From Macrostomum lignano (lineage: Eukaryota): a DNA stretch of 64,000 bases. The translations under genes and the position numbers were made by a program. The notes under the pieces are model-generated. The model did no database searches. It was not told the DNA's origin and worked only from the letters and a program-made list of their open reading frames with translations. Positions 14,145 to 40,266 of this stretch are shown here, one piece after another (within the stretch, counting starts at the first letter, position 1; every line of letters begins with the position of its first letter). The DNA lies in contig NIVC01000636.1 in NCBI GenBank assembly GCA_002269645.1, positions 271,646 to 335,645 on the forward strand. Direction: 5' to 3'.

Positions 14145-14689
14145 CGTTGCTGCCGCGCTGCCGGGGCTCTGCGGTAAAAATGCGAACGACAGAACTGCAC
14201 TGGCAAGAGGCCGACAGACAAATGCGGGCTAAGCTGATTTTATGCAAAAGTCACTGGCCCGCTGGGGCGCCCGGTCGCCCCACCTCCTGCACAGGCGTAC
14301 AAACCCAGGGGCCTTGACATTTCCTGCTCTGTCTGCCCTCAACACCCCTGGCCTGCAGGTCTTTGCTTGGCTTTCAGGTTGACTTTTTCGCTCTGTCTCA
14401 TTGCTTTTGCGCATAAAAAGCAGCCAGCGGGCCTGTCGCTGCTCTGGAGCGCGCCACACCCTAATTTTTGACACACCTCCGAGCACCTGACCTGCTGCTT
14501 GCTCCAATACAGATAGCAGTGCGTTGCAACATGCAAAACGGTGGGAATGATGGAGATTGTTTGGCGCTGACCGAAGAAGTAAAGCCACTTTTAGCTCGAA
14601 TTGTACTCGTAAATAATTACTGGCAAGAGGGTGAAGTTGACCGGAGCTGTGTCCAGTCACGAAGGGAACAAAGGGGAAGAAAGGACAGG

Positions 14690-15525
14690 GGAGATGAAAG
14701 GATAGAGGGGAGAGAGCGAAGAGAGGGAAGAGAGGGGCGAGGTGGGAGAGAGAGGAGAGAAGGAAGAGAGGGAAGAGAGGGGAGAGAGAGGAGAGAAGGA
14801 AGAGAGGGAAGAGAGGGAAGAGAGAAGAGAGGGAAGAGAGGGAAGAGAGAAGAGAGGGAAGAGAGGGAAGAGAGAAGAGAGGGAAGAGAGGGAAGAGAGG
14901 GAAGAGAGAAGAGAGGGAAGAGAGGGAAGAGAGAAGAGAGGGAAGAGAGGGAAGAGAGGGAAGAGAGGGAAGAGAGGGAAGAGAGGAGAGAGAGGGAAGA
15001 GAGGGAAGAGAGGGAAGAGAGGGAAGAGAGGAAAGAGAGGAGAGAAGAGAGGGAAGAGAGGGGAAAGAGGGGGGAGATGGGAGAGAGAGGAGAGAAGGAA
15101 GAGAGGGGAGAGAAGGAAGAGAGGGAAGAGAGGGAAGAGAGGGAAGAGAGGGAAGAGAGGGAAGAGAGGGAAGATAGGGAAGAGAGGGAAGAGAGGGAAG
15201 AGAGGGAAGAGAGGGAAGAGAGGGAAGAGAGGGAAGAGAGGGAAGAGAGGGAAGAGAGGGAAGAGAGGGAAGAGAGGGAAGAGAGGGAAGAGAGGGAAGA
15301 GAGGGAAGAGAGGGAAGAGAGGGAAGAGAGGGAAGAGAGGGAAGAGAGGGAAGAGAGGGAAGAGAGGGAAGAGAGGAAGAGAGGGAAGAGAGGGAAGAGA
15401 GGGAAGAGAGGGAAGAGAGGGAAGAGAGGGAAGAGAGGAGAGAGAGGGAAGAGAGGGAAGAGAGGAGAGAGAGGGAAGAGAGGGAAGAGAGAGAAGAGAG
15501 GAAAGAGAGGGAAGAGGGGAGAGGC
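14690..15525. repeat. GA-rich 9-bp satellite (GAGGGAAGA)n
   Basis: Direct observation; source of the spurious ERE/KRG/SLP ORFs. Confidence 0.93.
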
Positions 15526-16199
15526 AGAGTGTGGAGCAGAGAGATATGAAATCGAAGAGCACTGAGCAAATAATTGAGGTGATGGCAGAAGCAGATAAGT
15601 TTGCAGCTAATTTGATCAGCTCTAAAAGCTCTCCCTCTACTCAAAACTCCCAGGTCCAAGGCGGAACCGGTCAGGTGGCCGCAGCAACTGCTCTGCAGTC
15701 GGGGCCACCGCTATCTCTGTTATCTGTCTTGTAGTTTTTCAGCTGGACTTTATCAGAAGATTTTGTGCAAACTGAAATCTAAAGAAGCGCTTTATTGCTT
15801 TCGCAATAAAAGCAACAGCGAGGCTCCCTTGCTGATAGCTGCTTCTGGGGAGCTCCGAAAACTTTGCAGCACGCATGCTGTTTAAGACAACAAAGAGGGT
15901 ATTATAAGCGTTGAAATATTGACATTTGACATCGGGGCAAAGCGGTGGATTAAGCGGAGGGGGGCACAGCTGATCCTTCCGGGCAGATCCCCCACAAGAA
16001 GAAAAAGCAAGGCAGTTCTTTAAGCCTGAGTGGCAGCGGGGCTGCACGGGAACTGCACGCAAGGGCGGCTCTGGCTGCTTGGATCCGGCTTTCGGGCTGA
16101 CTGGAAAGACAGGCTGAGACTGAGTTGCTGTTCACCTGGCCTTGTGCCGCCGCTTGTGGTGGGCCAGCACAGACTTTTGTATTTTGTTTCTTCCTGGAT

Positions 16200-18825: not shown

Positions 18826-20385
18826 AATTCATTCTGATGCTGAAGAAATCCCCTGATAATTAGTTGATGTTTGCGGCCGCGCTGAGGTCTCACTTAAAAA
18901 ATTGGGCAGTAAAAGTGCGCCCACGAGCGGCATTGTTTGCTTTCATCTCTGCCGCTTTGAGACTGGCCGCTTCAAAGGCAGAAGCCTCCCTTTGAGAGAT
19001 AAAGTAGAGGGAGGGATGGGGGCAGCGCAGGCCGGTCCGCAGCGGTGGGAGCATCCTCGGCAGCAGAATATTTTTAATATACCATTGGTTTTTCTGACTC
19101 CGGCTTATCTGCCAGGCCTCCCCATTGTTTACCCAAGGCCAAGCTGCGAGCTCGGGACCCACCAGACCATGACTGCCGCATCCCAGCAGAAGTTGCCAGA
19201 TGGCATATCCATCGAGATGCACTGGGGTGGGGGGGGGGGCAATCCCGAGCCAGGGAGATCCCCGAACCGGAGTCTGGAGCAGTAAGTCTCCGCCAACTCT
19301 TCACGATGAGTCATCAAAAACTTATTCAACTAGAAGAAGAGCGGCTGGACTCGCACCAATGAGGACCCTCAAGGCACAGAGAGTGCACCTGCGTGACGAT
19401 GGAACTACCTGCCTGGTTGCGGGATGATGTCGCCGAAGGCCTGCGAAGATTTCCTACGAAACGAAGTTCCCTGTTCTAGTTGACACAGACAGCGGCTTTC
19501 TGCCTATCATTGAGTTCTGCTCAGTTCAGCGTCTGAAAATGAAACTGGGGGAAGGCCCGCCACTCCGCACCCTCGTTCAAGGACTCCTTGACCCGGCCAC
19601 CCCCGGCCAAGCCCCGGACAAGCCCCGGACAAAAACTTACCAAAGTCACGCGCAGCGGCTGAGCTCGGATCGCCAGGCTGGCGGGCAGTGACATCGTAGG
19701 TCAAGAGAGCCGCAGACCGGGCGCAACTCGCTGCTCACTGAGTGAGGGAAGTCGGATCGCATTTTATAATCAGTTCGGACTCGAAGGTGGAAAATCCCCC
19801 CCCCCAATTCCCCAAGGTGCACATCGGCAATATTCGAATTCGATTGCCCTGTTCCACCTTGGCTGGGCGAGGCCCCGCACTCCGCTCTAAGTGCTTAGTC
19901 TGGTTGCCGGGGGCGGTGGGAGGGCGGAACTCGCCTGTCAGCAGCTGCGCGGGCTGAGTTCTCCGCTGCTGCTTTAGCCTTGGCTGAGCTGATCCCAGAT
20001 GAGGCGGAGATGGAGGCTGGGTAATGCGGGAAGGGGCTGCAACTCGACCCCGCAGCAGCGGCAGCAGCAATTTTGCGCCTGAAGACCTCAGAGACGCGCG
20101 AGTGATCGGGACGGGGGGTCGACCGCTTGCTAGGCAGCTTGATGAGGCTTCATCTCGCGCCCAGACTCCTTCCCTACGCCCTGGCTCACCTTGGCACGCC
20201 ATGCTTGTCACGGCGGCTTTTTGATACTCAATGCCACTTCGGGCTGCCCGGGCATCGCGTGACGCCCCGGCTTCTCCGGGAGACGCTCGGCTGGCAGCCC
20301 CCCCCACCCAGATTTTACCGAGCCTGCCTGTCTTTCAGTTGCGCCACTTTCTGCAGCCCTGGCTTGCCTTCTGAAGCTCGCTTGA

Positions 20386-20895
20386 GGGAATCTTGCTTGA
20401 GGGAATCTTGCTTAAGGGAATCTTGCTTGAGGGAATCTTGCTTGAGGGAATCTTGCTTGAGGGAATCTTGCTTGAGGGAATCTTGCTTGAGGGAATCTTG
20501 CTTGAGGGAATCTTGTTTCAGGGAATCTTGCTTGAGGAAATCTTGCTTGAGGGAATCTTGCTTGAGGGAATCTTGCTTGAGGGAATCTTGCTTGAGGGAA
20601 TCTTGCTTGAGGGAATCTTGCTTGAGGGAATCTTGCTTGAGGGAATCTTGCTTGAGGGAATCTTGCTTGAGGGAATCTTGTTTCAGGGAATCTTGCTTGA
20701 GGAAATCTTGCTTGAGGGAATCTTGCTTGAGGGAATCTTGTTTCAGGGAATCTTGCTTGAGGGAATCTTGCTTGAGGGAATCTTGCTTGAGGGAATCTTG
20801 CTTGAGGGAATCTTGTTTCAGGGAATCTTGCTTGAGGGAATCTTGCTTGGGGGAATCTTGCTTGGGGGAATCTTGCTTGAGGGAATCTTGCTTGA
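20386..20895. repeat. 15-bp minisatellite (GGGAATCTTGCTTGA)
   Basis: Direct observation. Confidence 0.95.
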
Positions 20896-20951
20896 AATAA
20901 TCTTTATCAGGAATCTTCTTGAAGAAATCTTCAAGGGAATCATGCTTATTC

Positions 20952-21737
<786 letters not shown>

Positions 21738-22419
21738 GAACTGGTGGGCCATGAGCAGCGCAGGGATGGACAGAGGAGGGGGCGCGCATTCAAATCGATT
21801 TATTCGCAACGCACAGCACGGAACCTGCAGGGTCAGAGAGCGCAGTTGAGCAGAGGGGGGGGGGGGTTCTGCTCGAATTCCCCCGGCTGAGATCGAAGAT
21901 TAATTTGGCTTCGACGGCCGGGCGACCGGGAGGCGCGAGGCCCGGAACGGGAAACTTCTTTGACTTCTGGCCTCCCCTCTCGGCCCTCTCCGAACAGGAA
22001 AGCCGGGCCTGCTGCGCACTCGGGCTCGAATTTTCGTCTCAAATCTGAGGTTCGATATTTACGGGTGTTGTGCACTTTTGAGTAGAGCAGCCTCTGCCCT
22101 GGAGACCGGTGGCTAGACGGAAGGACTCACTGAGGCTCTCCATCAGGGCAGCTTACGCTCGTATGACAGCTTAGTGATTGATTGATTGACAGCCTGGGGT
22201 CAGCTGCAATAGGAAAAATATTTAGAGTCGTCCGAAAGAATTTTGGGAAATTGTGACTGTATTGGTTCTCAACTATTCCCCCGAAGACACGCCCTCTTCC
22301 TCGTGCTGAATGCCCCCCCCCCCGAAAAAATTCCTGGTTGGGCGCAACACTGGATCTTCGCACGCACGAAGCACCCCTATTTTTCTAGATCCTATCAGTG
22401 TACATAGTATTGACTCATT

Positions 22420-23340
22420 GGCCCAGCAGTGTACAAAGACACAAGGGCCCAGCAATGTACATACACACAAAGACACATGTACATAGACACATACACAAGG
22501 GCCCAGCAATGTACATAGACACAAAGACACAATGTACATAGACACATACACAAGGGCCCAGCAATGTACATAGACACAAAGACACAAGAGCCCAGCAATG
22601 TACATTGACACAAAGACACAAGAGCCCAGCAATGTACATAGACACAAAGACACAATGTACATTGACACAAAGATACAAGAGCCCAGCAATGTACATTGAC
22701 ACAAAGACACAAGAGCCCAGCAATGTACATTGACACAAAGACACAAGAGCCCAGCAATGTACATTGACACAAAGACACAAGAGCCCAGCAATGTACATAG
22801 ACACAAAGACACAATGTACATTGACACAAAGACACAAGAGCCCAGCAATGTACATTGACACAAAGACACAAGAGCCCAGCAATGTACATTGACACAAAGA
22901 TACAAGAGCCCAGCAATGTACATTGACACAAAGACACAAGAGCCCAGCAATGTACATAGACACAAAGACACAATGTACATTGACACAAAGACACAAGAGC
23001 CCAGCAATGTACATTGACACAAAGACACAAGAGCCCAGCAATGTACATTGACACAAAGACACAAGAGCCCAGCAATGTACATTGACACAAAGACACAAGA
23101 GCCCAGCAATGTACATTGACACAAAGACACAAGAGCCCAGCAATGTACATAGACACAAAGACACAATGTACATTGACACAAAGACACAAGAGCCCAGCAA
23201 TGTACATTGACACAAAGACACAAGAGCCCAGCAATGTACATTGACACAAAGATACAAGAGCCCAGCAATGTACATATACACAAAAGTTCAGCAATGTACA
23301 TAAACCCTTTAGCCCAGCAACATACTTCAATACATAGACC
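22420..23340. repeat. 34-bp minisatellite (GCCCAGCAATGTACATTGACACAAAGACACAAGA) with shorter variants
   Basis: Direct observation. Confidence 0.92.
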
Positions 23341-24584
23341 CAAGAGCCCAGTAAATGTGCATAGACCCCTTATTTATCACGATAGATAAGAAGGCTTCAT
23401 CCCTTTTCACCTTTTATTGGTTTTTACTAGCATGTATTGAAGCCGAATCTCGGGACAAATGTGATGCAGAACACACAGATATTCAATCTTCTGCTGAGCC
23501 ATAGCCAAAGTGTGCTGGGATTTCACTTCAGAATACTACAGTATAGTCTTCATTCCCAAGCAGATCGAAATGATCCAAGGTGAATTCGTGTAATTTGCAC
23601 GGGAGTGAAAAACGTGTTTTATTAATTTAATGCATAACGTTACTGTAAAAAAATAATTTGATCTTAAGAAGCCTCTGACTTCGTATTTCAAATTTCAAAG
23701 CGAGCTGGAGTCTCTCTTAGATAAATTTTAAGGATTTGTTAATTGAGATTCAAAGCAAAGGCAGTGGAAAATCTCCGGCTTTAATTTTCGGCAAGCGCGC
23801 AAAGAGAGAACTGAGCTTGCCTTATTATTCAGTCTCAGACTCTCTGCGTCATCAGCCACTTCTGGCCGGGACTTGAAAGCTTGAATCAAACAAAGAAGAC
23901 TCAAACGAATTTAGACCCAGGTACAGGTAATGCCAGTCAACCAGACCGGACTCAAAGCTCGTGAGCACCAAGTTATCAATAAATCAATAAGGTGTGAATT
24001 TGAATTGCGATTGTTTTGTTTCATTCAACAAAAATATATATTAGAAAGTTATGAAAGTGATTCCCGGATATATACTTAGAAATACTTGTTTTTGTGTACT
24101 TTTATTTTCAACCGCCGTGATATACTTATCTATCCTGGGTAGAAAAACAAAACTGATTTTTGATTACTGAAACTGGAATTAGCATCCAGCATCTGAGATG
24201 CGGCTGGGTTGCTAGGGCCTACAGACTAATCTTGGTCACAAATCGCTGCAGCACAGCTGAGCTCTGCTCCTGCTCTCACTTTGGCTGATTATCTAACTCA
24301 CTGGCTGAGTCCACACTGAGCTTTCCTTGCCTAATCCCCGGGTGTCTGGGGGAGACTGGGAATAGAGAGGCTGGGCGCCTCATCAGTCGGATTGCGCGCT
24401 GAGGCTGGGACTCGGACAGGAGTTGGCGCTGAACTTTTTTGGCATCCCGATGGGATTCGAGCTCTGACAGCGAGATTCGAGATTTGCTCTGGGGATTTGG
24501 GCTGGAGTGACGGGAGACACGCGGTGAGCATTTGCTCCTGCCGTTCATCAATACAATTTCCCCTTTAATCAGTTGGTTTGTTAA

Positions 24585-26321: not shown

Positions 26322-29084
26322 GTCTCTGCGCTCCGCTGTGTCAATCCGCTCCCCTTCTCGCCAAAAAGCGCCGCTCCAGTCTTTTAAGGCTTTCCCAGAC
26401 TTATCTGAGCTGCACCGGGGCGGGGTGGCGAGATGGCGCGGCGGGTGGCCGTTTGTTTATCCCCACTAGTCCTGTCCCCGCCTGCCCTCGGGCCTGGACC
26501 AATGACAGCCGGCTCGCGTACTGCGGCATGCGGACTGGCACCTGCTGTTTGACTGGGAAGGGGCGGCAGTTCCCCAGGGCTGAGCTGAGGGGAGCAGTTT
26601 GAGCGCTGGGAGAGAGATGAGGAGAGATGAGAGAGATGAGATGAGGATCTGCAGCTGGGAATGCGGAGGGGGCCAGGTCCCATCCCGACACTTACAGGCT
26701 TTTGTTTCCTCACGTGGGGACAGAAAACAGAAGGCAGACAGACAGAAACACTGCACTGCCGGCACTGAATACGGGGGGGGGGGGTACGGGCTGAGAATAA
26801 GGGAACTGCTCAGTCTCACAGGACCTCAGCTCCGACACGACGTATAATTAAGAGTATAATGCAAGACATGCGGGACTGCTGTGCTAATTTCTGCTGCAAT
26901 TTCTGAATTGATCTCCAGCCTCGCAGTTTTTCCCAGCTCTCGAAGCGCCCGCTGACGTCCCACCTCCGTCCCGGAGTGCAGCGGGGTACAGCGGCCCGGC
27001 GGTCAGTCTGGAGTCTGTACTCTGGCATTGGTTTGAGTCAGGTGTGCCAGAAAGCGGAAAACCCTCTGCCTGGGCCAAGATAGACTTTGAGAAGGGCTGG
27101 AATGATGAGGGCTAGGGGAAAGGAGACGCATGCTGACAGCAATATGCATCTTGCTCCATGGCCTGAGTTGCCATGGCAACCGTGACAGAATTGGCGAGGC
27201 GTAGAGGCACGAGCGCGAGCCTGGAAGAAGAGGGAGCGGAAAGAGGGGAGCTGAGCAAACCGAGCCAAACTTTGCAGTTTTGTCCCTGAGAGCATCGGCC
27301 TCGTTGCTGGGAGAGACGGGAGCGACTTGAGCTCAGCTTCAAGCTTTGTTGTCCATGAAAATTAGATGGATGTGCGGCAATTATTCATTTTTTCGAGCTC
27401 TCCTTTGAGCTCGCGGCACCGCCCTCCCAGCAATGTTTGCCTTTCCTCAACGACTCTTTGATGTCCGGGCCGATCGTGGCAATTTTCAGTCAAAAAAGCT
27501 GATCTCGAATGTACTTTAGTGGCCGCTGCCTTCCCAGATTTTTCCCGGGCATTAAGTCGGGGGATCTTGTGGGATTAGGAAAATTGCAGGCCGCATCGTA
27601 AAACTCTGCTGAGCTCGGATCGCCCCGGCGAGCCCATTGTGCAGCTATAATTGGATTCCGAGGGCCGCCGCTGCCGCTCGCTCCGCCGTCCCCGGCCGAA
27701 ATCTCGGCAATCGGATGGCGGCGCGGGGCACCGGGGAACTCTTTGAGGAAGCCGGCCTGTCCCGGCCAAGCTCTGAAACCCTGGGGATTTCAGTCAGTCT
27801 GCTTCCCCTTCCACTCTCTCTCGGTGCTAGTGAGCAGATTTGCCAGCCGCCTAAGGCATCAATTATTCCTCGTGTCCCTGTGTTATCCTCCTTCCTGAGA
27901 GCTGAGGGACCGGCTGCACTATTGCAGCCCCTCAGCCTCTCCAGCTCATGCCCGGCCTCATGTCTTGCATCCGCCGTTCTTGAGCCTCTCATTGTGAATT
28001 TTTAACGGACTTTCAAGCTCACGATTTCAGCCCATTCGCAAGTTCATGTGCGCAATCGGAGTCTGCGTCAATTATCACAGATCTGCAAATGTCTGGTCCA
28101 CGCTCTCTCCTGATGAGGAACAGAGCAACCGCAGCCCCACAATGCATGCAAGTTTTGACGCAGATGAGAAAGCAAGAGCTGGCTGTACTCTGTAAGTGGA
28201 GTGCGCCGACTCGATTGAGAATTTATCAATCAATTCATTTTTAACAGCATGAAAAAAAGCATTTGTCTGCCCACAGATGCCGTCTAGACAGCAACATGGG
28301 TCAGGACATACTCAGCAGAATTGGCAGGAGCAGCAGCCGAGCACTCAGCGCTACTCAGCGATTTGAGTAGCAATCAAAATCCGGCAGGGGCGCTCGGCAC
28401 TAGCTGCAGGGAATTCATCCCATTTTTAATCTCCAATCTGCCATGCAGCGCCCGCTAAGTGATGACGCATCAATGTCAAAATTTTTCAGCCTATAACAAG
28501 CTTCTATTATGAATCCAAAGAAGGTCGCGAGTTCGAGTACCACACTAGACTTGTCGAGAAATTGTATCCTACGCAGGGAATGTGTCCCAAGGCGGAAGTA
28601 TGCGGATGAGCAATTGCCATGGCAACCTCGGCATAAAGCCGTATTTAACAGTCAGATGAAATGACACACACAGGCCGCGCTGGGTGCCATGAAATATAAA
28701 TGCGCAGCGGGCTACTGCAGGCAGCCAGTTGAATAGGGGCAGGCGGGTATTGAGCCAAGCAGCGGCCAGGGCCAACTTGAAGCACCAATAAAATTGAGAA
28801 AAAAACTGTAGCCTGCGGCGTCGCTCCATCATCCTGCCGGAGTCGCCTGCCCAGGTGAGGGGATTGGGCCGTGATAAATTAAATTACAGCTCAGCGAGAG
28901 GTCTATGCGGGCTGGCAAGTACAGTTGGACACAATTAAGCAGGGCAAGTGCTCTACGCTGGTACGAGTATAGAGGCTGAATCGCGGATCATTGGATTTTA
29001 TGCGTTCATTTCTTCTACTTATAGTAACAAAGAAGCGCGAGAAATTCTTTTTTTAATCTTTGATAAATATCATCAATATTTACC

Positions 29085-30570
29085 CCCTCCCAAGTGACTT
29101 GATTCTCGTGAACTGGAACCCCAAGTGACTGGATTCTCGTGAACTGGAACCCCAAGTGACTGGATTCTCGTGAATTCGAACCCCCCAAGTGACTGGATTC
29201 TCGTGAATTCGAACCCCATTAAGTGACTGGATTCTCGTGAACTGGAAACCCCCCTCCCAAGTGACTGCATCCTCGTGAACTGGAACCCAAGTGACTGGAT
29301 TCTCGTGAACTGGAACCCAAGTGACTGCATTCTCGTGAACTGGAACCCCAAGTGACTGCATTCTCGTGAGCTGGAACCCCAAGTCCTGGATTCTCGTGAA
29401 CTGGAACCCCAAGTGACTGCATTCTCGTGAGCTGGAACCCCAAGTGACTGCATTCTCGTGAGCTGGAACCCCAAGTGTCTGGATTCTCGTGAACTGGAAC
29501 CCCAAGTGACTGGATTCTCGTGAATTCGAACCCCCCAAGTGACTGGATTCTCGTGAATTCGAACCCCCCAAGTGACTGGATTCTCGTGAACTGGAAACCC
29601 CCCCTCCCAAGTGACTGCATCCTCGTGAACTGGAACCCAAGTGACTGGATTCTCGTGAACTGGAACCCAAGTGACTGCATTCTCGTGAACTGGAACCCCA
29701 AGTGACTGCATTCTCGTGAGCTGGAACCCCAAGTCCTGGATTCTCGTGAACTGGAACCCCAAGTGACTGCATTCTCGTGAGCTGGAACCCCAAGTGACTG
29801 CATTCTCGTGAGCTGGAACCCCAAGTGACTGCATTCTCGTGAGCTGGAACCCCAAGTGACTGCATTCTCGTGAGCTGGAACCCCAAGTGACTGCTGACTG
29901 GATTCTCGTGAGCTGGAACCCCAAGTGACTGCATTCTCGTGACCTGGAACCCCAAGTGACTGCATTCTCGTGAGCTGGAACCCCAAGTGACTGCTGACTG
30001 GATTCTCGTGAGCTGGAACCCCAAGTGACTGCATTCTCGTGAGCTGGAACCCCAAGTGACTGCATTCTCGTGAGCTGGAACCCCAAGTGACTGCATTCTC
30101 GTGAGCTGGAACCCCAAGTCCTGGATTCTCGTGAACTGGAACCCCAAGTGACTGCATTCTCGTGAACTGGAACCCCAAGTGACTGCATTCTCGTGAGCTG
30201 GAACCCCAAGTCCTGGATTCTCGTGAACTGGAACCCCAAGTGACTGGACTCTCGTGAGCTGGAACCCCAAGTGACTGCATTCTCGTGAACTGGAATCCCA
30301 AGTGACTGCATTCTCGTGAGCTGGAACCCCAAGTCCTGGATTCTCGTGAGCTGGAACCCCAAGTGACTGCATTCTCGTGAGCTGGAACCCCAAATGACTG
30401 CATTCTCGTGAGCTGGAACCCCAAGTGACTGCATTCTCGTGAACTGGAACCCCAAGTGTCTGGATTCTCGTGAGCTGGAACCCCAAATGACTGGATTCTC
30501 GTGAGCTGGAACCCCAAATGACTGGATTCTCGTGAGCTGGAACCCCAAGTGTCTGGATTCTCGTGAACTG
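29085..30570. repeat. 31-bp minisatellite (CCAAGTGACTGCATTCTCGTGAGCTGGAACC) with a higher-order internal duplication
   Basis: Direct observation; rare variants (AATTCGAACCCCC, GGAAACCCCCTCCC) recur ~350 bp apart. Confidence 0.93.
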
Positions 30571-31154
30571 ACTCAGACTTAGTCTCACCAGAGCTAACAC
30601 CTGCTTCTTGTACAGGGAACGGTCAGAATGCCCTATTTAGTGTCTAACCGAGACCTTCTGATTCATTATTACAGTTGCAGCTGCAAAAACTTGGAGCAAC
30701 CTATCAATCAATACCCAGCTCAACTCTATACCGAGAGGAAAGGCAGAGTAACTTGCTCACTAATGCACTTTGAACCCGTGCTCATTCATCACAGCTCCAT
30801 GCCCTCATTTCCGGAGCAGGATTTTCTTTAAGAATGGCAATTGCCTCAGTTATAAGGCTACCAAAATGAAGCAAGGCAATCAATAAGCTGGACTGCATTT
30901 TAGCCAATAGTAAAGACAAAATATTTCCAATTCAATATGCCATATAATTACAGCAATCATGCAATGTACTCGTCATTACAATAGGATTAATAGGCGAAGT
31001 TCACTCTGAACAGAAGAAAAATTAAAATGAAATTTTTAAAACAACAGCTAACGGCACGGCTGCACGGCGTAACAGCGGCAAAGTCTGAATTTTTATGGAC
31101 ACCCAACTGACACCGAACACTAGAGGCTGCGGGCAGCGAGCTGGGGTGGGTGAT

Positions 31155-31510
31155 TGGGGGAGTGGGGGATTTGGGAAGTGGGGGATTGGGAAGTGGGGAT
31201 TGGGGAGTGGGGGATTTGGGAAGTGGGGGATTGGGAAGTGTTGGATTGGGAAGTGTGGGATTAGGAAGTGGGGATTTAGGAAGTGGGGATTGGGAAGTGG
31301 GGGATTGGGAAGTAGGGGATTGGGAAGTGGGGGATTGGGAAGTGGGGGATTTGGGAAGTGGGGGATTTGGGAAGTGGGGGATTGGGAAGTGTTGGATTGG
31401 GAAGTGTGGGATTGGGAAGTGGGGATTGGGAAGTGTTGGATTGGGAAGTGTTGGATTAGGAAGTGGGGATTTGGGAAGTGGGGATTTGGGAAGTGGGGGA
31501 TTGGGAAATG
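31155..31510. repeat. G-rich 15-16-bp minisatellite (GGGATTGGGAAGTGG)
   Basis: Direct observation. Confidence 0.9.
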
Positions 31511-32259
31511 GGGGCTTGAGAGGTGGGAGAACGCGACAATTTTGGGATGCAATCATAGTGTAAGCAGCGAGAAACAGAGAAATGTAATTAAAATAAAGTG
31601 AAAGAGTCAATTCGGGCAAACGAGAGACTTGAGTGCTGTCGCGACTGCTCAAACCGCAGCAGCAAAGATAGGGAGCACAAATGGACAGTAAATAAGCAAG
31701 GACAAAAAGCATTAATCGGGACTTTATTCCCGCAAAAATCCACGCAATGAGCAGAAACAAATAAAGGTACAAAAAGTCCGCACCCGCCGCTGCAGACAAG
31801 AATTTTTGCTTTTGCAGGCACACCTGCGATGGCAGGCTGGGAGATTGGGCAGCAGAGGGGGGGGGGCAAAGCGGCCGCAAGTGAGCAGCTCTGAGTACAG
31901 GGGGAGATTGCAAGTCCCAGAGAGCAAGACTTTTTGCGATCAGGGGGAGGAGGGACAGAAGGAGGAATCCGATTTTATCCCCCCCCCCGAGTGTACACCG
32001 GCTGGACGTCGCTAGCCGCGCAGAGCAAGCGGAGATGCTGCAAAGCGCCGATCTCAGCTGAGGAAGGCGGGCAGGCAGGTGCAAAATCAAAGACAAGACG
32101 ACAGGAAGAGGACTGAGCGCGGGGCCGGCGATGCAAAGCTATTTTGGGACTCTCCGAGCATCACAAGCTCCGAGTCCGCATTGAATTTCGTTGTTAAGCC
32201 CCCCGCCCATCCCCGGCTGCCTCCCCTCGCGGATTATCCCCAGCAGCTGAGCTGGAGCT

Positions 32260-32793
32260 TCATCCCTTGGCCTGTGCGGCCAGCCACTCCAGGCCGGCCG
32301 TGAGGCCCTCGCCGCTCAGGGCGCAGCAGGCCTGAATGTGCCAGGGGTTGGCCCGGATGCTGGTGAGGTCCAGCGCCTGGCTGATCTCGGCCGCGGACAG
32401 CCGGCCGTTGATGTCCTGCTTGTTGGCGAGCACGAGCAGCCGCGCCCGCTTCAGGTGGTCCGAGGCGAGCATCTTGTACAGCTCGTCCTTGATGACGGCC
32501 AGCCGCTGCCTGTCGGAGGAGTCGATGACGAGGATGATGAAGTCGGTGCTCTGGTAGTAGGTCTCCCACGTGGCCCGGATGGAGGTCTGGCCGCCCAGGT
32601 CCCACATCACGAAGTGGATGTTGCGCCAGCGCAGCTGCTCCACGTTGGAGCCGATGGTAGGCGAGGTGTGCACGGCCTCGCCCAGCACCAGCTGGTACAG
32701 CACGGTGGTCTTGCCGGCATTGTCCAGCCCGACCAGCAGTACTTTGTGCTCTTGGGTACCAAAAAGGCTCCACAGCCTGGCTATTATCAGCCC
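32260..32793 (-). CDS. ARL5: ADP-ribosylation factor-like GTPase 5; exon starts at Gly2 and the initiator ATG is not adjacent in the genome
   Basis: [31 protein letters not shown] and [13 protein letters not shown] match ARL5A/B. Acceptor TTGCAG| at 32799-32794 is followed by GGG CTG ATA. In-frame TAA at 32820-32818 with no ATG in between. Confidence 0.95.
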
Positions 32794-35195
32794 CTGCAAG
32801 TTGGCGAGTGCCGTGATTTACTGATAGGCTTCAACTGAACTCGAATTAACAACCAGGTAGGATCCTGGGATTGGGATCCTACTTGACCCTTATTCAATAC
32901 AAGGCTGGATGAGACAAGGAATTAGGCAGGCAGTCAAGATGGAATTGAAAGTTTCATGCTTGCATATCGAACTATTTGACAACAGGGAATAATCTGGTCT
33001 GTTCTTGCCACATTCTCTCAAACAAACCACATGCTAAGAGTTCACCTTCGACCTGCTGAATCATCTTGGGACCAGTCTGGTTCAGTATAAGCTGTGGTCC
33101 ATTTCTCTTCTACTCCCTTGGGTGTGGGATGAGAGATGCTAATGCCAGACCTGGGGAGTTGCAGCTCTCTACAAAAGTACATGTTTTTTGTTATATGGAT
33201 ATATAAGCTTGTAGACAGGACATACAAATACATATATGGCTTTGGGAATGCATATTGCCTATATCTAATTAGTAATATTTGCCAATCAACAACAGAATTA
33301 ATTTAGACTTATTAAAAGATCATTGGAGCCCTTGATTTAATTGGTAAGAAGGGGGGGGGGGTAAAACAGAAGAAATAAATTAATTTTGCCCATTTCAAAG
33401 CTTTTGTAAAGCAGAGGGAACTATCAAATTCTTAGGTTAGGGACTCAAGCAATAGAGATCTTCTAAGCAATTGAGGCTAAAGTTGAGATAAATTCAATCC
33501 TAGCCATTCTTATAATATTAATAAATAATAATTTACAATATTACACTTGCCTTAATGGCCAGATGTGCAACCAACAGCTTAGCTATAGCTATTATGCAAT
33601 TATGAAAAGTTATAGGAAATTAATTAGCTATAGATATAAACATAAGTAAAGAATAAGAAAATGTATAAACTGCTATAGATATAGATACAAGAAAGTTTTT
33701 GTTATGGTTGAGCTCTTGCTTGTTGGATAAGTTCACAATATATAAAATTTTATTTTTGACAAAAAATCTAATATATAGTATTGTATATTAAAAATAATTA
33801 TTAACAATATATTATTACCTATAACTTTAAAGCTATCATCTATTGGAATAAAAAATATTTTAGGACATAAAGGAATCTTAATAGCCAAAGTTAGTGATAT
33901 AATTATTGAATGAAATAAGAAAATCATGCTAAAAAATAGAAAAAAGAAAGAACTCATGATGAACTTATGAAAAGAAAGAGAAAAGATTGTCTATAAATGA
34001 AAGATTGAAAAAATATACATTAAAAGACCTTTCTTTTGCTGATTTGTTTTTTTCATATACTAAAAATGGTTTATCAATAGTGAATAGGTATCTATGCATA
34101 CATGCCCAACCTCAAAATTTCACCTGTCCGATGCAACTTAGTTTTATCTAGATTAGTTAGTTCCTCCTAATTGCAACTTAGTTCTTCTTGATTGCAACTC
34201 AGTTACCCCAATTGCAACTTAATTTTCAATTTGTATGATTTTCCTTGCCTTTTTTCTTTTCTTCTTTTTCTCTTTTCTTTTCTCTCTCTCCTCTCTCCTT
34301 TCTTTTCTTTTTCTCTTTCTCTCCTTCATTCTTTTCCCAATTTTTTCAATTTTCGCTTTTTTGATTTTGCAACTTACCTTGGCTAATGTTCCCAAAGATG
34401 TTCCCAAATCAGTACATGTATTTTTATTAAGCTCTAGCTCATTGCTAATAAATGGATGAAATATTATGCTAGCTAAGACATCAGAAATTATGCTTTTTTA
34501 TAGTTGATATAGCCCATAATAGTAATAATTTTATACTTTTCTACTATGCTAGGCCTAGGGCTAAAAAAGGTCTACATTTTATTTTACTAATTAGCAGATA
34601 ATCAATGTTTAATAGGTTTTAAAATTGTTAGACCTTTAACTTAAATAAGATAAATAGCATAGTAACTAAGTAAGCTGTAGTAGTAGGTAGGCTGTAGTAG
34701 GCCAGTGCAGGCAAAAATAGGCCCACCTAATAGTAATAGAATGGATATTGGATAAGATAAAATTGAATGGTTTAAATTGAACCAACAAAAGTTAAGAGTA
34801 AGACAAAGTGCTGACAAGCAAAAAGAAATATACAGAATAGAGAGTACTCGTATATATATACTAACGTAACCCACTTTTATAGCAGGAACTAAACTAAAAA
34901 GACTAACACTAGTCGCCTACCTTGACTGAGATTAAATTAAGCAAATAAAGACCAACCCTACCTCCTATACATAGTGATGGTGTGACGTACTTGCCTATAT
35001 TTGGAAGATTATTCGGCCTATTTTTTAGCACTTATTATCACACTTAAAATTATTTTGAGATTTACTGAAACAATTAAACTCAAATAGTTAAATTCGTTGA
35101 AATACCATATTGAGTTTCTTTACTTTTGTTTTTTTACACTATTCTGCCATTTTAATTTTAGATTTTACACGAAACAAACGTGAACAATAATGCCA

Positions 35196-35613
35196 GTAAA
35201 GTGTAAAAAGTTACACACCCAGTTTTTTTGGGGAAAACGTTACCTTCAAATTGCGTTCAAAGAGCACAATGAAATTGAAAATAATATTGTATTTTGATTT
35301 CGTTTGTCTAGTTCAAATTAAAATTGCAAGTTAGAAGCTTATAGAATGGGTAAAATAAATCACAAGAGCATTTTTATTTTTTCATTGGGTAAGCGTGTGT
35401 AAACCCTGGGTAATTTCAGGTACGTTTTTGGGGTAATGTCTTACCCAGCAATTAAACACTCATTTATTGGCCTCATCATCTATATTTTATGAATAATTAT
35501 TCTATGATTTATGCTGCATAGGCGATAGCAAGTTATTTTCAATTTCATTGCGCTCTTTGAATGCAATTTGAAGGTAACGTTTTCGGGTAACTGGGTAACT
35601 TTTTACACTTTAC
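35196..35613. mobile_element. Foldback/MITE-like element with ~85-bp inverted arms
   Basis: 35196-35284 (GTAAAGTGTAAAAAG...AAAACGTTACCTTCAAATTGCGTTCAAAGAGCACAATGAAATTGAAAATAA) is the near reverse complement of 35533-35613. No clear target-site duplication. Confidence 0.6.
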
Positions 35614-35829
35614 CATAAAGCTTGAACTGCAGAGCAAACATCTGCAGATAGCAAGCATCCCCAGATATTGTTGAAGCATCCACCCAGATAGCAAGCATCT
35701 TCCGAGATAGCAAGCATCCCCCAGATATTGTTGAAGCATCTACCCAGATATAAAAAATCCTGCAGATAGCAAGAATCCCTAAATTGCAAGCATCCCTGGA
35801 TAGAAAGAATCCGATACATGTAGCCTAGC

Positions 35830-36140
35830 TTATCAAGTGCAATAATCCTTTGTTTGCCAATGCAGTTAATCCTTGGTTTATCAAGCGCAGTAATCCTTGG
35901 TTATCAAGTGCAGAAATCCTTGGTTTATTAAGTGCAGTAATCCTTGGTTTATCAAGTGCAGTAATCCATGGTTTATCAAGTGCAGAAATCCTTGGTTTAT
36001 CAAGTGTAGTAATCTTTGGTTTATCAAGTGCAATAATCCTTGGTTTATCAAGTGCAGTAATCCTTGGTTTATCAAGTGCAGTAATCCTTGGTTTATCAAA
36101 TGCAGTAATCCTTGATATATCAAGTGCAGTAATCCTTGGT
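35830..36140. repeat. 24-bp minisatellite (ATCAAGTGCAGTAATCCTTGGTTT)
   Basis: Direct observation. Confidence 0.88.
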
Positions 36141-36191
36141 TTATTAAGTGAATGAAAAGAAAATTTCACTACTTTTATATACTTTATATAC

Positions 36192-36258
36192 ACTACTAAG
36201 ATTTGAACCTAGGTCGCTGCATTAGTAGTCCAGTATGTTCAGCTCTAGGCTAGCTCTC
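36192..36258 (-). pseudogene. Degenerate tRNA-like sequence (pseudogene or SINE head)
   Basis: Minus strand TAGCCTAGAGCTGAA...CTGGA CTACTAA TGCAG CGAC CTAGG TTCAAAT CTTAG gives an A-box, anticodon arm and T arm with mismatches; the acceptor stem does not pair. Confidence 0.45.
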
Positions 36259-38310
36259 ATTGAAGTTAAATGAATTTGTAGCTCATATAAATCAACACTC
36301 ACACAAAGTCAGGTAGAGTAAAAGTCACATGAAGCAGTTATGATATAATTAATTTCTTAGGCAGTCAGTATCAGTGTCTATACTAACAATATGGTTAGGC
36401 AATATAAATCAAGTACTGTGCTATGCTTCTACACTCAACACTAATGCAATTCAACTAGTATACAGACAATAAATAAAAAGCCTATTGTGATGCAATCTAT
36501 TTCAGAATCAGAATTCAACCAGTCAGTTTTTTTCTTAGCATTCTTATGATGCATTTAAAGTTGAAAGAGCTGCTTGACCTTTGCAAAAAGCATGTTTTTC
36601 AAATATTTAATCCCTTTAGCATCAAGCAATTTCTTAGCAACATTGCAAGTACTGTCATGGAAAAATTTCTGATTGAACAGTGCATGTTCAAAGAAAATTG
36701 GCTTAGCCATTTTTGCTAAAACTGATCACATACTTACCTAGATAGATAGATACCTACCAACAGACCATTTTTAGTATATAGAAAATGTTATTCTTAAAAA
36801 AGTGGCAATTTTTTTCTAGTTCTTTTAATTAAAGCATGTTTAAAGCATTATATGGCATTTTTTTGTTTTACAATACTTGCACTTTGTGTCAATTTTGTTA
36901 TATAATACCCATTGGAAATTAGTGAGAATTGAAATAGATGTAGCTTTGATTGCAAAAATGTTTCAATCATAGCTTGCTAGCACACAATCCTTATATTCAC
37001 TTTCATTATACAATGCCCTTAATGGAGAATTTGTTAAGAATGCATTGTAAAATGAAAGTGAGGAGGTATAGAAGCAAAAATAAGGGAGAATATTAAGAAT
37101 TGGATATAGCCATGAAGAATCTTACAATTTTAGCTTATTAGTGCACAATCCTTATATTCACTTTCATTATAGGCCTACGATGCCCTCAATAGAGAATTTG
37201 TTAAGAATACATTGTAAAATGAAAGTGAGGGGGATATAGCAAATAAATGAAAGACTGAAAAGAAATGGGTATGACTGTTAACAAATTATCCCTTATTTTC
37301 ATTTTTATCCCCCTCACTTTTGTTTTAGAATGCATTCTTAATAAAGTCTTATATATTGGTCTATCTATCAAATTGCAGCCATTTGTTGTCTTGGTATCTA
37401 TTTTCTTAATTAACTAGTATTTCTAAAGCTGCTAAAAATTATCATTGATTTTAAATGAGTGACCAATAGTACAAAATTATATTTACACTACTATAAAAGT
37501 ACAACATAATATTGGTTAAAATTATTTCTATACATACTTCTGAAGAGTCAGAATCAACATTTGAAAATTGACCTTCCATTTTTTGCAAATTGCAAGTGTA
37601 GTGTCCTGATATATTGCTAATCCTTGTTTTGTAAAAGGTTTTGTTTATTCACTCAAATTTTGGATGCAATAATAAAAATATTATGTTGCATCTTTATTTG
37701 AAGAATAACAGCATTGTTTATCTATAGACCAACACATTTTTTTGTTTTTTTTCTACAAAGACATTTAATCACTCTTTAATTGGTGGTTCCTTAAAATTAG
37801 AAAGGATAGGTAGTAGATAATGGATAATGGATAATAGTAAAAGATGGCCGGTAGAGGGGGGGTTGCTACTTTAGATATATTAGATAGGTAAGTACTAGAT
37901 AACACTGTATATTAGTAGCAATTTTAGTGTATATAAGTCACACTTTGGAAGATTTTAAAAGATTAGAAGATTGTATTTTGTCATTTGAACTAGAAATGAT
38001 CAAATAGATTTACATCATGGCTATATTGATATATTGCCATGATAAAACTGGTTTCTTTATATACTTTAGTCAAATTTAATAATAGTAAGAGGCTGCCAAA
38101 GCCACTTTTCAATTCTAAGCAGATCTATAAAAGTATAAGGGATTATGTTATTTAACCTGACAATAATTTAGAGAAATTAGTCTAGTTGTACATATGCAGT
38201 TGGTTACTAGGCCCATTTGCCCATGGGTTAAATATGAGATTTGTCTATTTGTTTTAACTAAAGACAAAGTTATTAACTAATATAGTCATTTGTGGCTATC
38301 GCGCCTGCAG

Positions 38311-40266
38311 CACCGCCTGTGGTGCACTGGCTTAGTGCGCCATCTCTGGCGGCGTCGCAGGCGGCAGGCAGCCATTGTGGCCGCTGCCGTCACCGCCCTG
38401 CTGGCGCTCCTGCTGCTGGCCAGCGCCTCGCTCAGAAGGCCGCTGCCGCCGCCCTTCCAGCTGGAATCCGCCAGCACCATCGAATCCGTTGACCTGTTCG
38501 ACTCTCGCCGCGATGTCATCGTGCTGCTGCACATGCAGAAGACCGGCGGCTCGCACCTCAACCGCCAGCTCGTCTCCGGCTTGCGCCGACCCGACATGCG
38601 CTGCCAGTGCGGCCTCGGCGGCCTCGGCGGTGCGCGCCGGCGGAAATGGCGCTGCAGCTGCCGCAACAGCCGCGGCGACCTGTGGATTGTGAGCCGCTAC
38701 AGCACCGGCTGGCTCTGCGGCCTCCACGCCGACTTCGCCGCGCTGTCTGCCTGCGTGCCCGGCCAGCTGGCCGCGCTCGACTCCGACTTTGAGAGGCCGC
38801 GCCGCCTCCGCTACGTCACCATGCTGCGCCGGCCGGCCGACCGCTTCCTGTCCGAGTGGCAGCACGCGCGCCGCGGCGCCACCTGGCGGAAATCGCAGCC
38901 CACCTGCCGCGGCCGCCGGCCTCCGCCCTGCCGGACTGGCGACGGCGCCTGGCGCGGCGTCTCCCTGGCCGAGTTCGCCGCCTGCCGCGCCAACCCGGCG
39001 CTGAACCGGCAGGCGCGCATGCTGGCCAACGCCAGCGGCCTGCCCTGCCGGGCCGTCTTCGCCAACGGGAATCGAACCGCGGACCTACTGCTGGCCAGTG
39101 CGCTTCACAATCTGGTAGGGATGGCGGCGTTCGGCCTGACAGAGTGGCAGGTGAGCGAGCTGCTGGGAAGCTGGGACTTTTATGGAGTTGAGTATCTGGG
39201 ATATCTGATGGTGTTGAGGATCTGGGATATCTGATGGAGTTGAGGATCTGGGATATCTGGTGGTGTTGAGGATCTGGGATATCTGATGGAGTTGAGGATC
39301 TGGGATATCTGATGGAGTTGAGGATCTGGGATATCTGATGGAGTTGAGGATCTGGGATATCTGATGGAGTTGAGTATCTGGGATATCTGATGGAGTTGAG
39401 GATCTGGGATATCTGATGGAGTTGAGTATCTGGGATATCTGATGGAGTTGAGGATCTGGGATATCTGATGGAGTTGAGGATCTGGGATATCTGATGGTGT
39501 TGAGGATCTGGGATATCTGATGGTGTTGAGGATCTGGGATATCTGATGGAGTTGAGGATCTGGGATATCTGATGGTGTTGAGGATCTGGGATATCTGATG
39601 GAGTTGAGGATCTGGGATATCTGATGGTGTTGAGGATCTGGGATATCTGATGGGGTTGAGGATCTGGGATATCTGAATCTGATGGAGTTGAGGATCTGGG
39701 ATATCTGATGGAGTTGAGGATTTGGGATACTGAGGGAGCTGTAAAGACTCTTCAAGCGGATTTGCTGTTGTCACGCGGATGTCACTCCACCAAGCACCAC
39801 TCTCGGACCCGCGCAGATCCTGACGCAATACCTGCTGAGCAGGCGCCTCGGCCTGAGCTTCAGCCGCCTGTTCTGGCAGCAGGACGCCACCGTCGCCTCT
39901 AATTGGCGCGCCAGCGGCAACTTCAGCCTCGTCGCCGACGCCGGCGACCTCCAGCAGAGGCGACTGGCGGAGCTCGCCAACCCCGCCGACGCCCGCCTGT
40001 ACGCAGCGGCCGAGCGGCTGTTTTTCGGCCAGGCCCGCCGCCTGCTGGCTCGGGAGCCGCTGCTGTCGGCCGGCCAGCGGGCTCGAGTCCGGGACGCCGA
40101 CTCCGCAATCGGCGGCGACGCACTGACCGCGCTGGCCCGCCGGGTGCTGCTGGAGCTGGGCGCCGTTGAAGTGGACGACGCCGAGAAGGCAGACATCCGG
40201 CGCCGGGTGCGCAAGAAGCTCCTGCGGGCTGGCAACGACGAGGCCGAGTCGGATTCGAACTCGTGA
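38311..40266 (+). CDS. HS6ST: Heparan sulfate 6-O-sulfotransferase, 2 coding exons; initiator ATG not adjacent in the genome
   Basis: Exon 38311-39150 (TM anchor, LHMQKTGG 5'-PSB motif, WIVSRYSTGWLCGLHAD, YVTMLRRPADRFLSEWQHARRGATW, FGLTEWQ|GTGAGC) joins exon 39817-40266 (GCGCAG|ILTQYLL..., stop TGA). Begins at acceptor CCTGCAG|CAC. In-frame TAA at 38278. Confidence 0.93.
39185..39730. repeat. 26-bp minisatellite in the HS6ST intron (TGGGATATCTGATGGAGTTGAGGATC)
   Basis: Direct observation. Confidence 0.93.

What the first reader, a model, noticed from the sequence alone, without database searches (positions are those of the whole stretch)
32760..32820. ARL5 has no genomic start codon: its exon begins exactly at the myristoylation Gly2, consistent with an AUG donated by the spliced leader
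Seen: the minus strand reads ...AACTTGCAG|GGG CTG ATA ATA GCC ([11 protein letters not shown]), there is an in-frame TAA at 32820-32818, and no ATG occurs before the G3-region Met. Known: Arf/Arl proteins need Met-Gly for N-myristoylation, and flatworm spliced leaders end in AUG, which can act as the initiator Met (shown in schistosomes). Inference: trans-splicing at 32793 creates AUG-GGG, so translation and membrane targeting of this GTPase would depend on SL trans-splicing.
Basis: partly seen in the sequence, partly recalled or inferred. Interest (0 to 1): 0.82.

Follow-up and report, generated by a model that had tools for sequence, protein, structure and literature searches.

The report
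ARL5 gene that borrows its start codon
This flatworm (Macrostomum lignano) ARL5 GTPase gene has no start codon of its own and almost certainly gets its AUG from the spliced leader, a mechanism known in flatworms since 2006, so it is a clean new example and not a new kind of thing.

Summary
On the minus strand the ORF begins at 32793, directly after TTGCAG. It starts with GGG (Gly2 of ARL5) and runs 177 codons to TGA without an intron. An in-frame TAA lies 9 codons upstream. The first in-frame ATG is codon 63, in the DLGGQ motif.

The window is Macrostomum lignano contig NIVC01000636.1. The published spliced leader (SL) of this species ends in ...TTGCATG, and its trans-splice acceptor motif is [T/C]TNCAG, which this site matches.

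All five ARL5 loci in the assembly have an acceptor exactly at Gly2, an upstream in-frame stop and no ATG. They fall into two paralog groups with saturated synonymous divergence. All five are deposited as ATG-less coding sequences starting at or next to that boundary. Fasciola and Taenia orthologues have a genomic ATGGG and introns.

I saw no SL-joined read or cDNA, so the junction itself is inferred. The mechanism was shown by Cheng et al. 2006, so this is a new member of a known kind. The divergent neighbouring sulfotransferase gene (exon start 38311) shows the same pattern.

The parts
32794..32799 (-). Trans-splice acceptor TTGCAG. It matches the M. lignano SL acceptor motif [T/C]TNCAG and ends immediately before Gly2.
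   Evidence: Sequence. Motif from PMC8629364. The same position holds an acceptor in all five ARL5 loci.
32263..32793 (-). Single-exon ARL5 coding sequence without an ATG: 177 codons, from [12 protein letters not shown]... to ...AAQAKG. P-loop [13 protein letters not shown] and NKQD are all intact.
   Evidence: Translation. Pfam Arf PF00025, 217 bits. Best named hits are ARL5A/5B at 64-67% identity. The deposited protein P0001 starts at G.
32260..32262 (-). Stop codon TGA of ARL5.
32818..32820 (-). In-frame TAA 9 codons upstream of Gly2. It closes the reading frame, so no acceptor further upstream could give an SL-AUG fusion to ARL5.
32605..32607 (-). First in-frame genomic ATG (exon codon 63, FVMWDLGGQ). 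Starting here would delete the myristoylated helix, the P-loop and switch 1.
32800..38310 (-). Upstream intergenic region, which must contain the promoter and the outron. It is AT-rich (GC 0.31), full of repeats and transposable-element (TE) remnants, and bounded by a divergently transcribed gene. The transcription start is unknown.
   Evidence: No minus-strand ORF of 130 aa or more lies here.
35614..35616 (-). It is not supported: it lies inside a repeat array, is no more than chance, and is off the donor consensus.
   Evidence: 3 ATG|GT observed against 5.96 expected; none is GTRAG. (tandem repeats at 35642-35812).
31723..31728 (-). AATAAA, a putative polyadenylation signal about 530 nt after the stop codon. 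This is inferred only.
   Evidence: Sequence.
38305..38310 (+). Acceptor CTGCAG of the divergent neighbour. The exon starts at 38311 (CAC CGC CTG...), and this gene also lacks a usable genomic ATG.

Best explanation
The locus is an intact, expressed ARL5 gene of Macrostomum lignano whose genomic copy starts at codon 2. The pre-mRNA is transcribed from somewhere in the AT-rich region upstream. The spliceosome joins the 35-nt spliced leader, which ends ...UUGCAUG, to the acceptor TTGCAG| at 32794/32793 and discards the outron. The mature mRNA then reads ...UUGC AUG GGG CUG AUA..., where the SL AUG is the only upstream AUG. Its context is favourable, with G at -3 from the SL and G at +4 from the Gly codon. 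Translation gives Met-Gly-Leu-Ile-Ile-Ala-Arg. After removal of Met, Gly2 is N-myristoylated, and the amphipathic N-terminal helix anchors ARL5-GTP on trans-Golgi membranes. Any transcript that is not trans-spliced at this site cannot make functional ARL5. Shown here: the sequence anatomy, the species, the SL sequence, the motif match, conservation across paralogs, purifying selection, and the absence of a supported cis donor. Inferred: the SL junction in RNA, use of the SL AUG by ribosomes, and myristoylation.
For: 1. Anatomy: acceptor, Gly2, upstream in-frame stop, and no ATG before codon 63.
2. Species and SL: the window equals M. lignano NIVC01000636.1. The SL ends in ATG and the acceptor motif is [T/C]TNCAG. 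An SL RNA gene-like sequence with exon...ATG|GTAAG was found independently in L013.
3. All five ARL5 loci share an acceptor exactly at Gly2, an in-frame TAA upstream and no ATG. They are the window, its 98.7%-identical duplicate, and three copies of a 70%-identical paralog with TTTCAG|GGT GTA.
4. The paralogs form one clade (200/200 NJ bootstraps), sister to the neodermatan ARL5 sequences. Their divergence is pS 0.83 (saturated) and pN 0.18. The window and its duplicate differ by 4 synonymous and 0 nonsynonymous changes. The ATG-less genes have therefore been kept functional for a long time.
5. The deposited coding sequences of all five loci start at or next to the acceptor boundary without Met, and the three paralog-group entries are named 'partial'. 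The annotation pipeline cuts transcripts at peaks of SL-containing reads and then calls ORFs. Neighbouring CSRNP_N genes in the same annotation start with a normal ATG.
6. The N-myristoylation pattern is met by GLIIAR and GVALAK. Gly aligns with Gly2 of MG... in 14 other animals. ARL5 is described as using a myristoylated helix at the TGN.
7. The upstream neighbour is divergent, so no same-strand upstream gene could supply an exon.
8. Precedent: SL AUG has been shown to act as initiator in schistosomes and inferred in Echinococcus.
Against: No RNA evidence was seen directly. The protein with a leading Met is not on record in the assembly collection, and the gene was not found in the supplementary tables that could be searched. 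A 'partial' annotation alone does not prove SL use: the downstream 340-aa gene is also 5'-extended without an ATG but has no acceptor at its annotated start. The polypyrimidine tract before the acceptor is weak. The comparison with the duplicate contig cannot test the upstream ATG|GT candidate, because the whole intergenic region is 98.7% identical.
Confidence: 0.85

Rival explanations
1. A cis-spliced upstream exon ending in ATG, such as ATG|GTAAAG at 35616-35614, supplies the initiator. The acceptor at 32794 would then be an ordinary intron acceptor.
For: The acceptor is sequence-wise indistinguishable from a cis acceptor. Three ATG|GT sites exist within 5.5 kb upstream, and the candidate is preserved in the duplicate contig.
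Against: Three sites is below the chance expectation of 5.96 +/- 2.6, and none fits GT[G/A]AG. The candidate sits in a tandem-repeat array. None of the five deposited gene models has an upstream coding exon, although the pipeline is RNA-seq guided. The only upstream sequence shared between paralog loci is a TE-like element with terminal inverted repeats.
Confidence: 0.07
2. Translation starts at a non-AUG codon or at the internal Met on transcripts that are not trans-spliced. Candidates are TTG or ACG upstream, CTG at codon 3, or Met63.
For: Near-cognate codons ATC, ACG and TTG lie in frame between the TAA and GGG, and CTG is codon 3.
Against: The paralog has no near-cognate codon in the equivalent stretch (CCT CTC CAA TAT AAT TTT CAG), and its codon 3 is GTA. 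These starts would either bury or remove Gly2, which is invariant in the ARL5 alignment. Starting at Met63 removes the P-loop.
Confidence: 0.03
3. The locus is a dead copy, for example a retro-pseudogene that lost its ATG, or the missing ATG is an assembly or annotation artefact.
For: The coding sequence is intronless, whereas the Fasciola and Taenia orthologues have introns. There is no ATG.
Against: The ORFs are intact in five loci on five contigs, with all GTPase motifs. pN is 0.18 against a saturated pS, and recent copies differ by 0 nonsynonymous changes. No other ARL5 with an ATG from M. lignano appears among the top hits, so these loci are the species' ARL5 complement in that collection.
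Confidence: 0.03

Closest known systems
Flatworm mRNAs that use the 3'-terminal AUG of the spliced leader as initiator Met. Source: Cheng, Cohen, Ndegwa & Davis 2006, J Biol Chem 281:733, as cited in PMC12582326, PMC9851317 and PMC3510090. These are the 'slORFs' of PMC9851317.
   Same: The SL ends in AUG. The acceptor is in phase 0, directly before a conserved codon 2. No genomic AUG could give the conserved N-terminus. The AUG-less state appears to be conserved between related genes, as reported for Neodermata.
   Different: The species is a free-living macrostomorphan. I found no gene-level analysis of SL-AUG use for it in the searchable literature. The neodermatan ARL5 orthologues checked have their own ATG. 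In this gene the donated Met is also the precondition for Gly2 myristoylation. RNA and protein evidence is missing here.
ARL5 (ARL5A/ARL5B) subfamily of Arf-like GTPases, which recruit GARP and ARMH3 at the trans-Golgi network.
   Same: 64-67% identity over the full length to ARL5A/B of insects, echinoderms, cephalochordates and vertebrates. The Arf domain and G motifs are present, and so is the Gly2 plus amphipathic N-terminus.
   Different: The coding sequence is a single exon and has no genomic Met codon. It is duplicated in the Macrostomum lineage into two divergent paralogs with very different GC3, 0.92 against 0.46.
SL trans-splicing that resolves operons (downstream genes of polycistrons) in M. 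lignano (PMC8629364).
   Same: It uses the same SL and the same acceptor motif.
   Different: No annotated same-strand gene lies within 5.5 kb upstream, and the neighbour is divergent. This looks like trans-splicing of a monocistronic or first-in-unit transcript.

Membership tests
SL-AUG-initiated flatworm mRNA (Cheng et al. 2006 type) | The organism's spliced leader ends in AUG. | tested here: met
   The window is M. lignano. The published SL is ...TTATTGCATG. The same exon followed by GTAAG occurs in contig L013.
SL-AUG-initiated flatworm mRNA (Cheng et al. 2006 type) | A 3' splice acceptor directly precedes the ORF, in phase with the SL AUG, with no stop in between. | tested here: met
   TTGCAG|GGG fits [T/C]TNCAG and is in phase 0. 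The same holds in four other loci.
SL-AUG-initiated flatworm mRNA (Cheng et al. 2006 type) | No genomic in-frame AUG can produce the phylogenetically conserved N-terminus. | tested here: met
   In-frame TAA 9 codons upstream; first ATG at codon 63; Gly aligns with Gly2 of the orthologues.
SL-AUG-initiated flatworm mRNA (Cheng et al. 2006 type) | cDNA or reads with the SL joined at that acceptor. | not testable with these tools
   Support is indirect only. The deposited coding sequences start at or next to the acceptor in five loci, and they come from a pipeline that cuts at SL-read peaks. The Met-prefixed protein is not on record.
SL-AUG-initiated flatworm mRNA (Cheng et al. 2006 type) | Translation actually starts at the SL AUG. 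| not testable with these tools
   This needs ribosome profiling, a reporter assay or N-terminal proteomics.
ARL5 subfamily, Arf family GTPases | Arf-family GTPase domain with intact G1, G3 and G4 motifs. | tested here: met
   PF00025, 217 bits, E 1.3e-64. [13 protein letters not shown] and NKQD are present.
ARL5 subfamily, Arf family GTPases | The closest named relatives are ARL5A/5B and not other ARLs. | tested here: met
   Nearly all named proteins among the top 120 hits, apart from 'hypothetical' or 'unnamed' entries, are called ARL5/5A/5B, at 61-70% identity over 97-100% of the length. It clusters with flatworm ARL5.
ARL5 subfamily, Arf family GTPases | N-terminal Met-Gly with an N-myristoylation motif. 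| tested here: inconclusive
   Gly plus the motif G-{EDRKHPFYW}-x2-[STAGCN]-{P} is present, but the Met is not encoded in the genome. The feature is met only if the SL supplies the AUG.
Downstream gene of an SL-resolved operon | An upstream gene on the same strand at a short (repeat-adjusted, under 1 kb) distance. | tested here: not met
   The nearest annotated upstream gene is 5.5 kb away on the opposite strand. There is no minus-strand ORF of 130 aa or more in between.
Processed pseudogene or retrocopy of an SL-bearing mRNA | An SL relic upstream, together with a disabled ORF. | tested here: not met
   The 40 nt upstream match the SL no better than 413 background acceptor-like sites (empirical p 0.90, 0.42, 0.23). 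The ORF is intact and under purifying selection. Only the intronless state fits.

The most novel reading that the evidence does not exclude
The common ancestor of the Macrostomum ARL5 paralogs may have arisen by retroposition of an SL-bearing ARL5 mRNA. That would explain why the coding sequence is intronless. The SL-derived 3' end ...TTGCATG|GG would then have been converted by loss of one T into the acceptor TTGCAG|GG. The copy would be trans-spliced again at exactly codon 2 and locked into obligate SL dependence. This is 'spliced-leader recycling', of the kind described for dinoflagellate genes (my recollection, not checked here). One consequence is that SL trans-splicing would be the only route to any functional ARL5 in this animal.
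Probability: 0.06. Interest if true: 0.55.

Novelty: new member of a known kind. Interest (0 to 1): 0.28.

Why it matters
The locus is a very clean, sequence-level case in which trans-splicing is needed to create the protein's start, and with it the Met-Gly signal for lipid anchoring of a conserved Golgi GTPase. It is more than a 5'-UTR modification.

In practice, such genes appear as 'partial' proteins in the public M. lignano annotation. They will be mis-scored as incomplete by ATG-requiring gene finders and orthology pipelines. Adding the SL ATG fixes them.

M. lignano is the one flatworm with stable transgenesis, so this short acceptor-plus-Gly2 cassette would be a convenient reporter for testing SL-AUG initiation in vivo.

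It does not open a new question, because the mechanism has been known for 20 years.

Tried and rejected
1. SL relic or retrogene test. I aligned the 35-nt SL to the 40 nt upstream of each ARL5 acceptor. The scores were no better than those of 413 background [CT]TNCAG sites, so the idea is rejected as unsupported.
2. Direct transcript evidence. An exact look-up of Met+P0001 in the assembly collection found nothing. Cluster look-ups returned only genome-derived entries without Met. The supplements of the M. lignano papers either were not held or did not list the genes.
3. Using the duplicate contig to test the upstream ATG|GTAAAG candidate. This was uninformative, because the intergenic region is 98.7% identical.
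4. Conserved upstream exon. The only block shared between the window's upstream region and the paralog loci is 79% identical over 270 nt and begins AGCCAAG|GTAAGT. It turned out to be a MITE-like repeat element. In the paralog loci it is flanked by the terminal inverted repeats (TIRs) CATACATGCCCAAC / GTTGGGCATGTATG and contains internal 21-nt tandem repeats. It is not an exon.
5. SL RNA gene in the window. There is none: the 16-mer search with 2 mismatches gave 0 hits.
6. Metagenome scan for SL 3' end + G. It gave three hits. Two are chance matches and one is an SL RNA gene, not an SL-ARL5 junction.
7. Cheng et al. 2006 could not be read, so its content is cited through other papers.

Full report
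**What is in the sequence.** On the minus strand the window reads ...CACTCGCCAACTTGCAG|GGG CTG ATA ATA GCC AGG CTG TGG..., with the first exon base at 32793. Translating from the in-frame TAA at 32820-32818 gives *ITALANLQ followed by [30 protein letters not shown]... The frame runs 177 codons to TGA at 32262-32260 with no interruption. The first in-frame Met is exon codon 63, in FVMWDLGGQ (32607-32605). The acceptor AG is the only AG between the TAA and GGG. It is therefore the only place where a leader ending in AUG could be fused in frame.

**What the gene is.** The product scores 217 bits against Pfam Arf. Its best named relatives are ARL5A/ARL5B of many animals, at 61-70% identity over essentially the full length. 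In an alignment with 14 orthologues that all start MG, the first residue encoded here aligns with Gly2 without a gap. GLIIAR satisfies the PROSITE N-myristoylation pattern. ARL5 is described as binding the TGN through an N-terminally myristoylated amphipathic helix (PMC6829661).

**Where the window comes from.** The exact protein, starting at Gly, is on record on two contigs of GCA_002269645.1, the Macrostomum lignano Mlig_3_7 assembly. The window is base-for-base identical to NIVC01000636.1 over the 12.5 kb compared. The other contig, NIVC01000637.1, is a recent duplicate. Its intergenic region is 98.7% identical, and its coding sequence differs by 4 synonymous and 0 nonsynonymous changes.

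**The spliced leader.** The published M. lignano SL is CGGTCTCTTACTGCGAAGACTCAATTTATTGCATG. It is attached to about 30% of genes. The top motif at trans-splice acceptors is [T/C]TNCAG, positioned exactly at the junction (PMC8629364). TTGCAG at 32799-32794 fits this motif. The SL contains no other ATG. Joined to the exon, it gives G at -3 and G at +4 around the AUG. A scan of metagenome contigs for the SL 3' end turned up a contig (L013) carrying the whole 35-nt exon followed by GTAAG. This is an SL RNA gene-like sequence and confirms the ATG|GT boundary independently. No SL RNA gene lies in the window.

**Comparative evidence.**
- M. lignano has a second ARL5 group, 70% identical in protein, with three loci: Mlig003408g1, Mlig001563g1 and Mlig024902g1. 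All three are named 'partial' and start at G or V.
- Their DNA reads ...AAC TAA CCT CTC CAA TAT AAT TTT CAG|GGT GTA GCC... This is again an acceptor fitting the motif exactly at Gly2, an in-frame TAA upstream and no ATG.
- Between the two groups, synonymous sites are saturated (pS 0.83) while pN is 0.18.
- The M. lignano sequences form one clade in 200 of 200 NJ bootstraps, sister to the neodermatan ARL5 sequences.
- The simplest history is one loss of the genomic ATG before an old, lineage-specific duplication, followed by long retention under purifying selection.
- Fasciola hepatica and Taenia crassiceps ARL5 have a genomic ATGGGC and multi-exon genes. The ATG-less, intronless state is therefore not general to flatworms.
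- A [CT]TNCAG site occurs about once per 310 positions in the window. Two independent coincidences with the codon-2 boundary have a probability of the order of 1e-5.

**What the public annotation implies.** The coding sequences deposited for the five loci start at the first base after the acceptor, or one codon in for Mlig024902. The annotation came from a genome-guided transcript assembly. Its 5' ends were set by the TBONE pipeline at peaks of reads that carried the SL, and ORFs were then called by TransDecoder (PMC5730564). A transcript model beginning exactly after CAG in five loci is what that pipeline produces at a trans-splice site. A cis-spliced ATG exon would have produced a complete ORF. 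This inference comes from the described method, not from reads I saw. 'Partial' alone is not sufficient evidence. The downstream gene (26429-25407, minus strand) is also annotated without an ATG, but it has no acceptor at its start, and its real start is probably the ATG at 26321.

**Rivals.**
- Cis-spliced ATG exon. The 5517 nt upstream contain 3 ATG|GT sites against 5.96 +/- 2.6 in shuffles. None fits the species' donor consensus GT[G/A]AG.
- Conserved upstream exon. The only upstream block shared with the paralog loci begins with a perfect-looking AAG|GTAAGT. It is a MITE-like element, which in the paralog loci is flanked by 14-bp terminal inverted repeats.
- Non-AUG initiation. This is not conserved in the paralog and would destroy the Gly2 signal.
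- Pseudogene or artefact. This is excluded by five intact, selected copies.
- Operon downstream gene. This is unlikely because the upstream neighbour is divergent.
- Retrocopy of an SL-bearing mRNA. The idea is attractive because the coding sequence is intronless and TTGCAG differs from the SL end TTGCATG by one T. However, the upstream sequence resembles the SL no more than background acceptor sites do.

**What is known already.** All reported flatworm SLs end in AUG, and the AUG can act as the initiator. According to later papers, Cheng et al. 2006 found it in frame in 28% of S. mansoni trans-spliced transcripts and required in more than 40 cDNAs. In Echinococcus, use of the SL AUG appears to be conserved between orthologues. 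For Macrostomum, Wiberg et al. 2023 note that the SL's final ATG is probably a start codon and kept it on reads for that reason. I found no paper that analyses SL-AUG use gene by gene in Macrostomum, or that links it to N-myristoylation.

**Verdict.** The finding is a new, tidy member of a known kind. Interest is modest.

Noticed in passing
window 38278-38535, + strand (exon start 38311): The divergent neighbour is a Sulfotransfer_2-family protein (PF03567) whose ...HMQKTGGS... stretch resembles, from my recollection, the PAPS-binding motif of heparan-sulfate 6-O-sulfotransferases. It shows the same pattern as ARL5. The acceptor CTGCAG| is followed by CAC CGC CTG..., which encodes a basic tail and a transmembrane (TM) anchor (HRLWCTGLVRHLWRRRRRQAAIVAAAVTALLALLLL). 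An in-frame TAA lies 11 codons upstream, and the first in-frame Met is exon codon 75, beyond the anchor. The deposited CDS starts at the acceptor in the duplicate contig and one codon in for the window. It is a second likely SL-AUG-dependent gene, sharing the intergenic region with ARL5.
   Followed up: partly
window 26429-25407, - strand: The annotated 340-aa CDS starts at a non-ATG codon with no acceptor in front of it (ccatctc|GCCACC). The ATG at 26321 is followed by a signal-peptide-like MTVRYTCLRPLPLLLLLLLSAFA. The deposited 5' extension therefore looks like an ORF-calling artefact. The protein has no Pfam match.
   Followed up: partly
window 32263-32793 versus L001/L004/L005 6001-6534: The two ARL5 paralog groups have very different codon composition: GC3 is 0.92 in the window gene and 0.46 in the paralogs. 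The window gene's upstream intergenic DNA has a GC of only 0.31. The cause is unexplained (biased gene conversion, expression level or regional effects are possibilities).
   Followed up: no
window 32263-32793; L006 3001-12536; L007 3001-6347: The ARL5 coding sequence is a single exon in all five M. lignano loci. In Fasciola the gene spans 9.5 kb and in Taenia 3.3 kb, with introns in both. So the Macrostomum lineage lost the introns as well as the ATG.
   Followed up: partly
window 34097-34384 (- strand); L004 4570-5093; L001 about 4634-5093: A MITE-like element is present 1.3-1.6 kb upstream of ARL5 in the window and about 0.9-1.4 kb upstream in two of the three paralog loci, in the same orientation and at 79% identity. 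It has a GA-rich core and 21-nt AACTAAGTTGCAAT... tandem units, and in L004 it is flanked by the TIRs CATACATGCCCAAC / GTTGGGCATGTATG. No other copy was found in the 64-kb window. Its position next to both paralogs is probably coincidental, but this was not tested against the genome-wide copy number.
   Followed up: partly
window 28039-28111 versus L008 14146-16799: A 72-73-nt unit is present once in the window but about 37 times in tandem on the duplicate contig NIVC01000637.1. This is a large minisatellite copy-number difference between two otherwise 97-99% identical copies.
   Followed up: no
window 31146-31527; 35830-36150; 29100-30570: There are long tandem arrays. A 15-nt unit GTGGGGGATTGGGAA occurs x25 about 0.7 kb downstream of the ARL5 stop. 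A 24-nt unit occurs x13 upstream. A roughly 31-nt periodic array underlies the long 'ORFs' at 29073-30600.
   Followed up: no
L013 634-668 (JGI metagenome contig Ga0302322_100095745): An environmental metagenome contig carries the complete 35-nt M. lignano SL exon followed by GTAAGACACCGG... This looks like an SL RNA gene of Macrostomum or a close relative in an environmental sample.
   Followed up: no
window 14229-15734, 19735-23343: Several long ORFs (up to 492 aa) lie in a stretch of which 15.4-25.4 kb has no CDS in the deposited annotation. They may be transposable-element remnants and were not examined.
   Followed up: no
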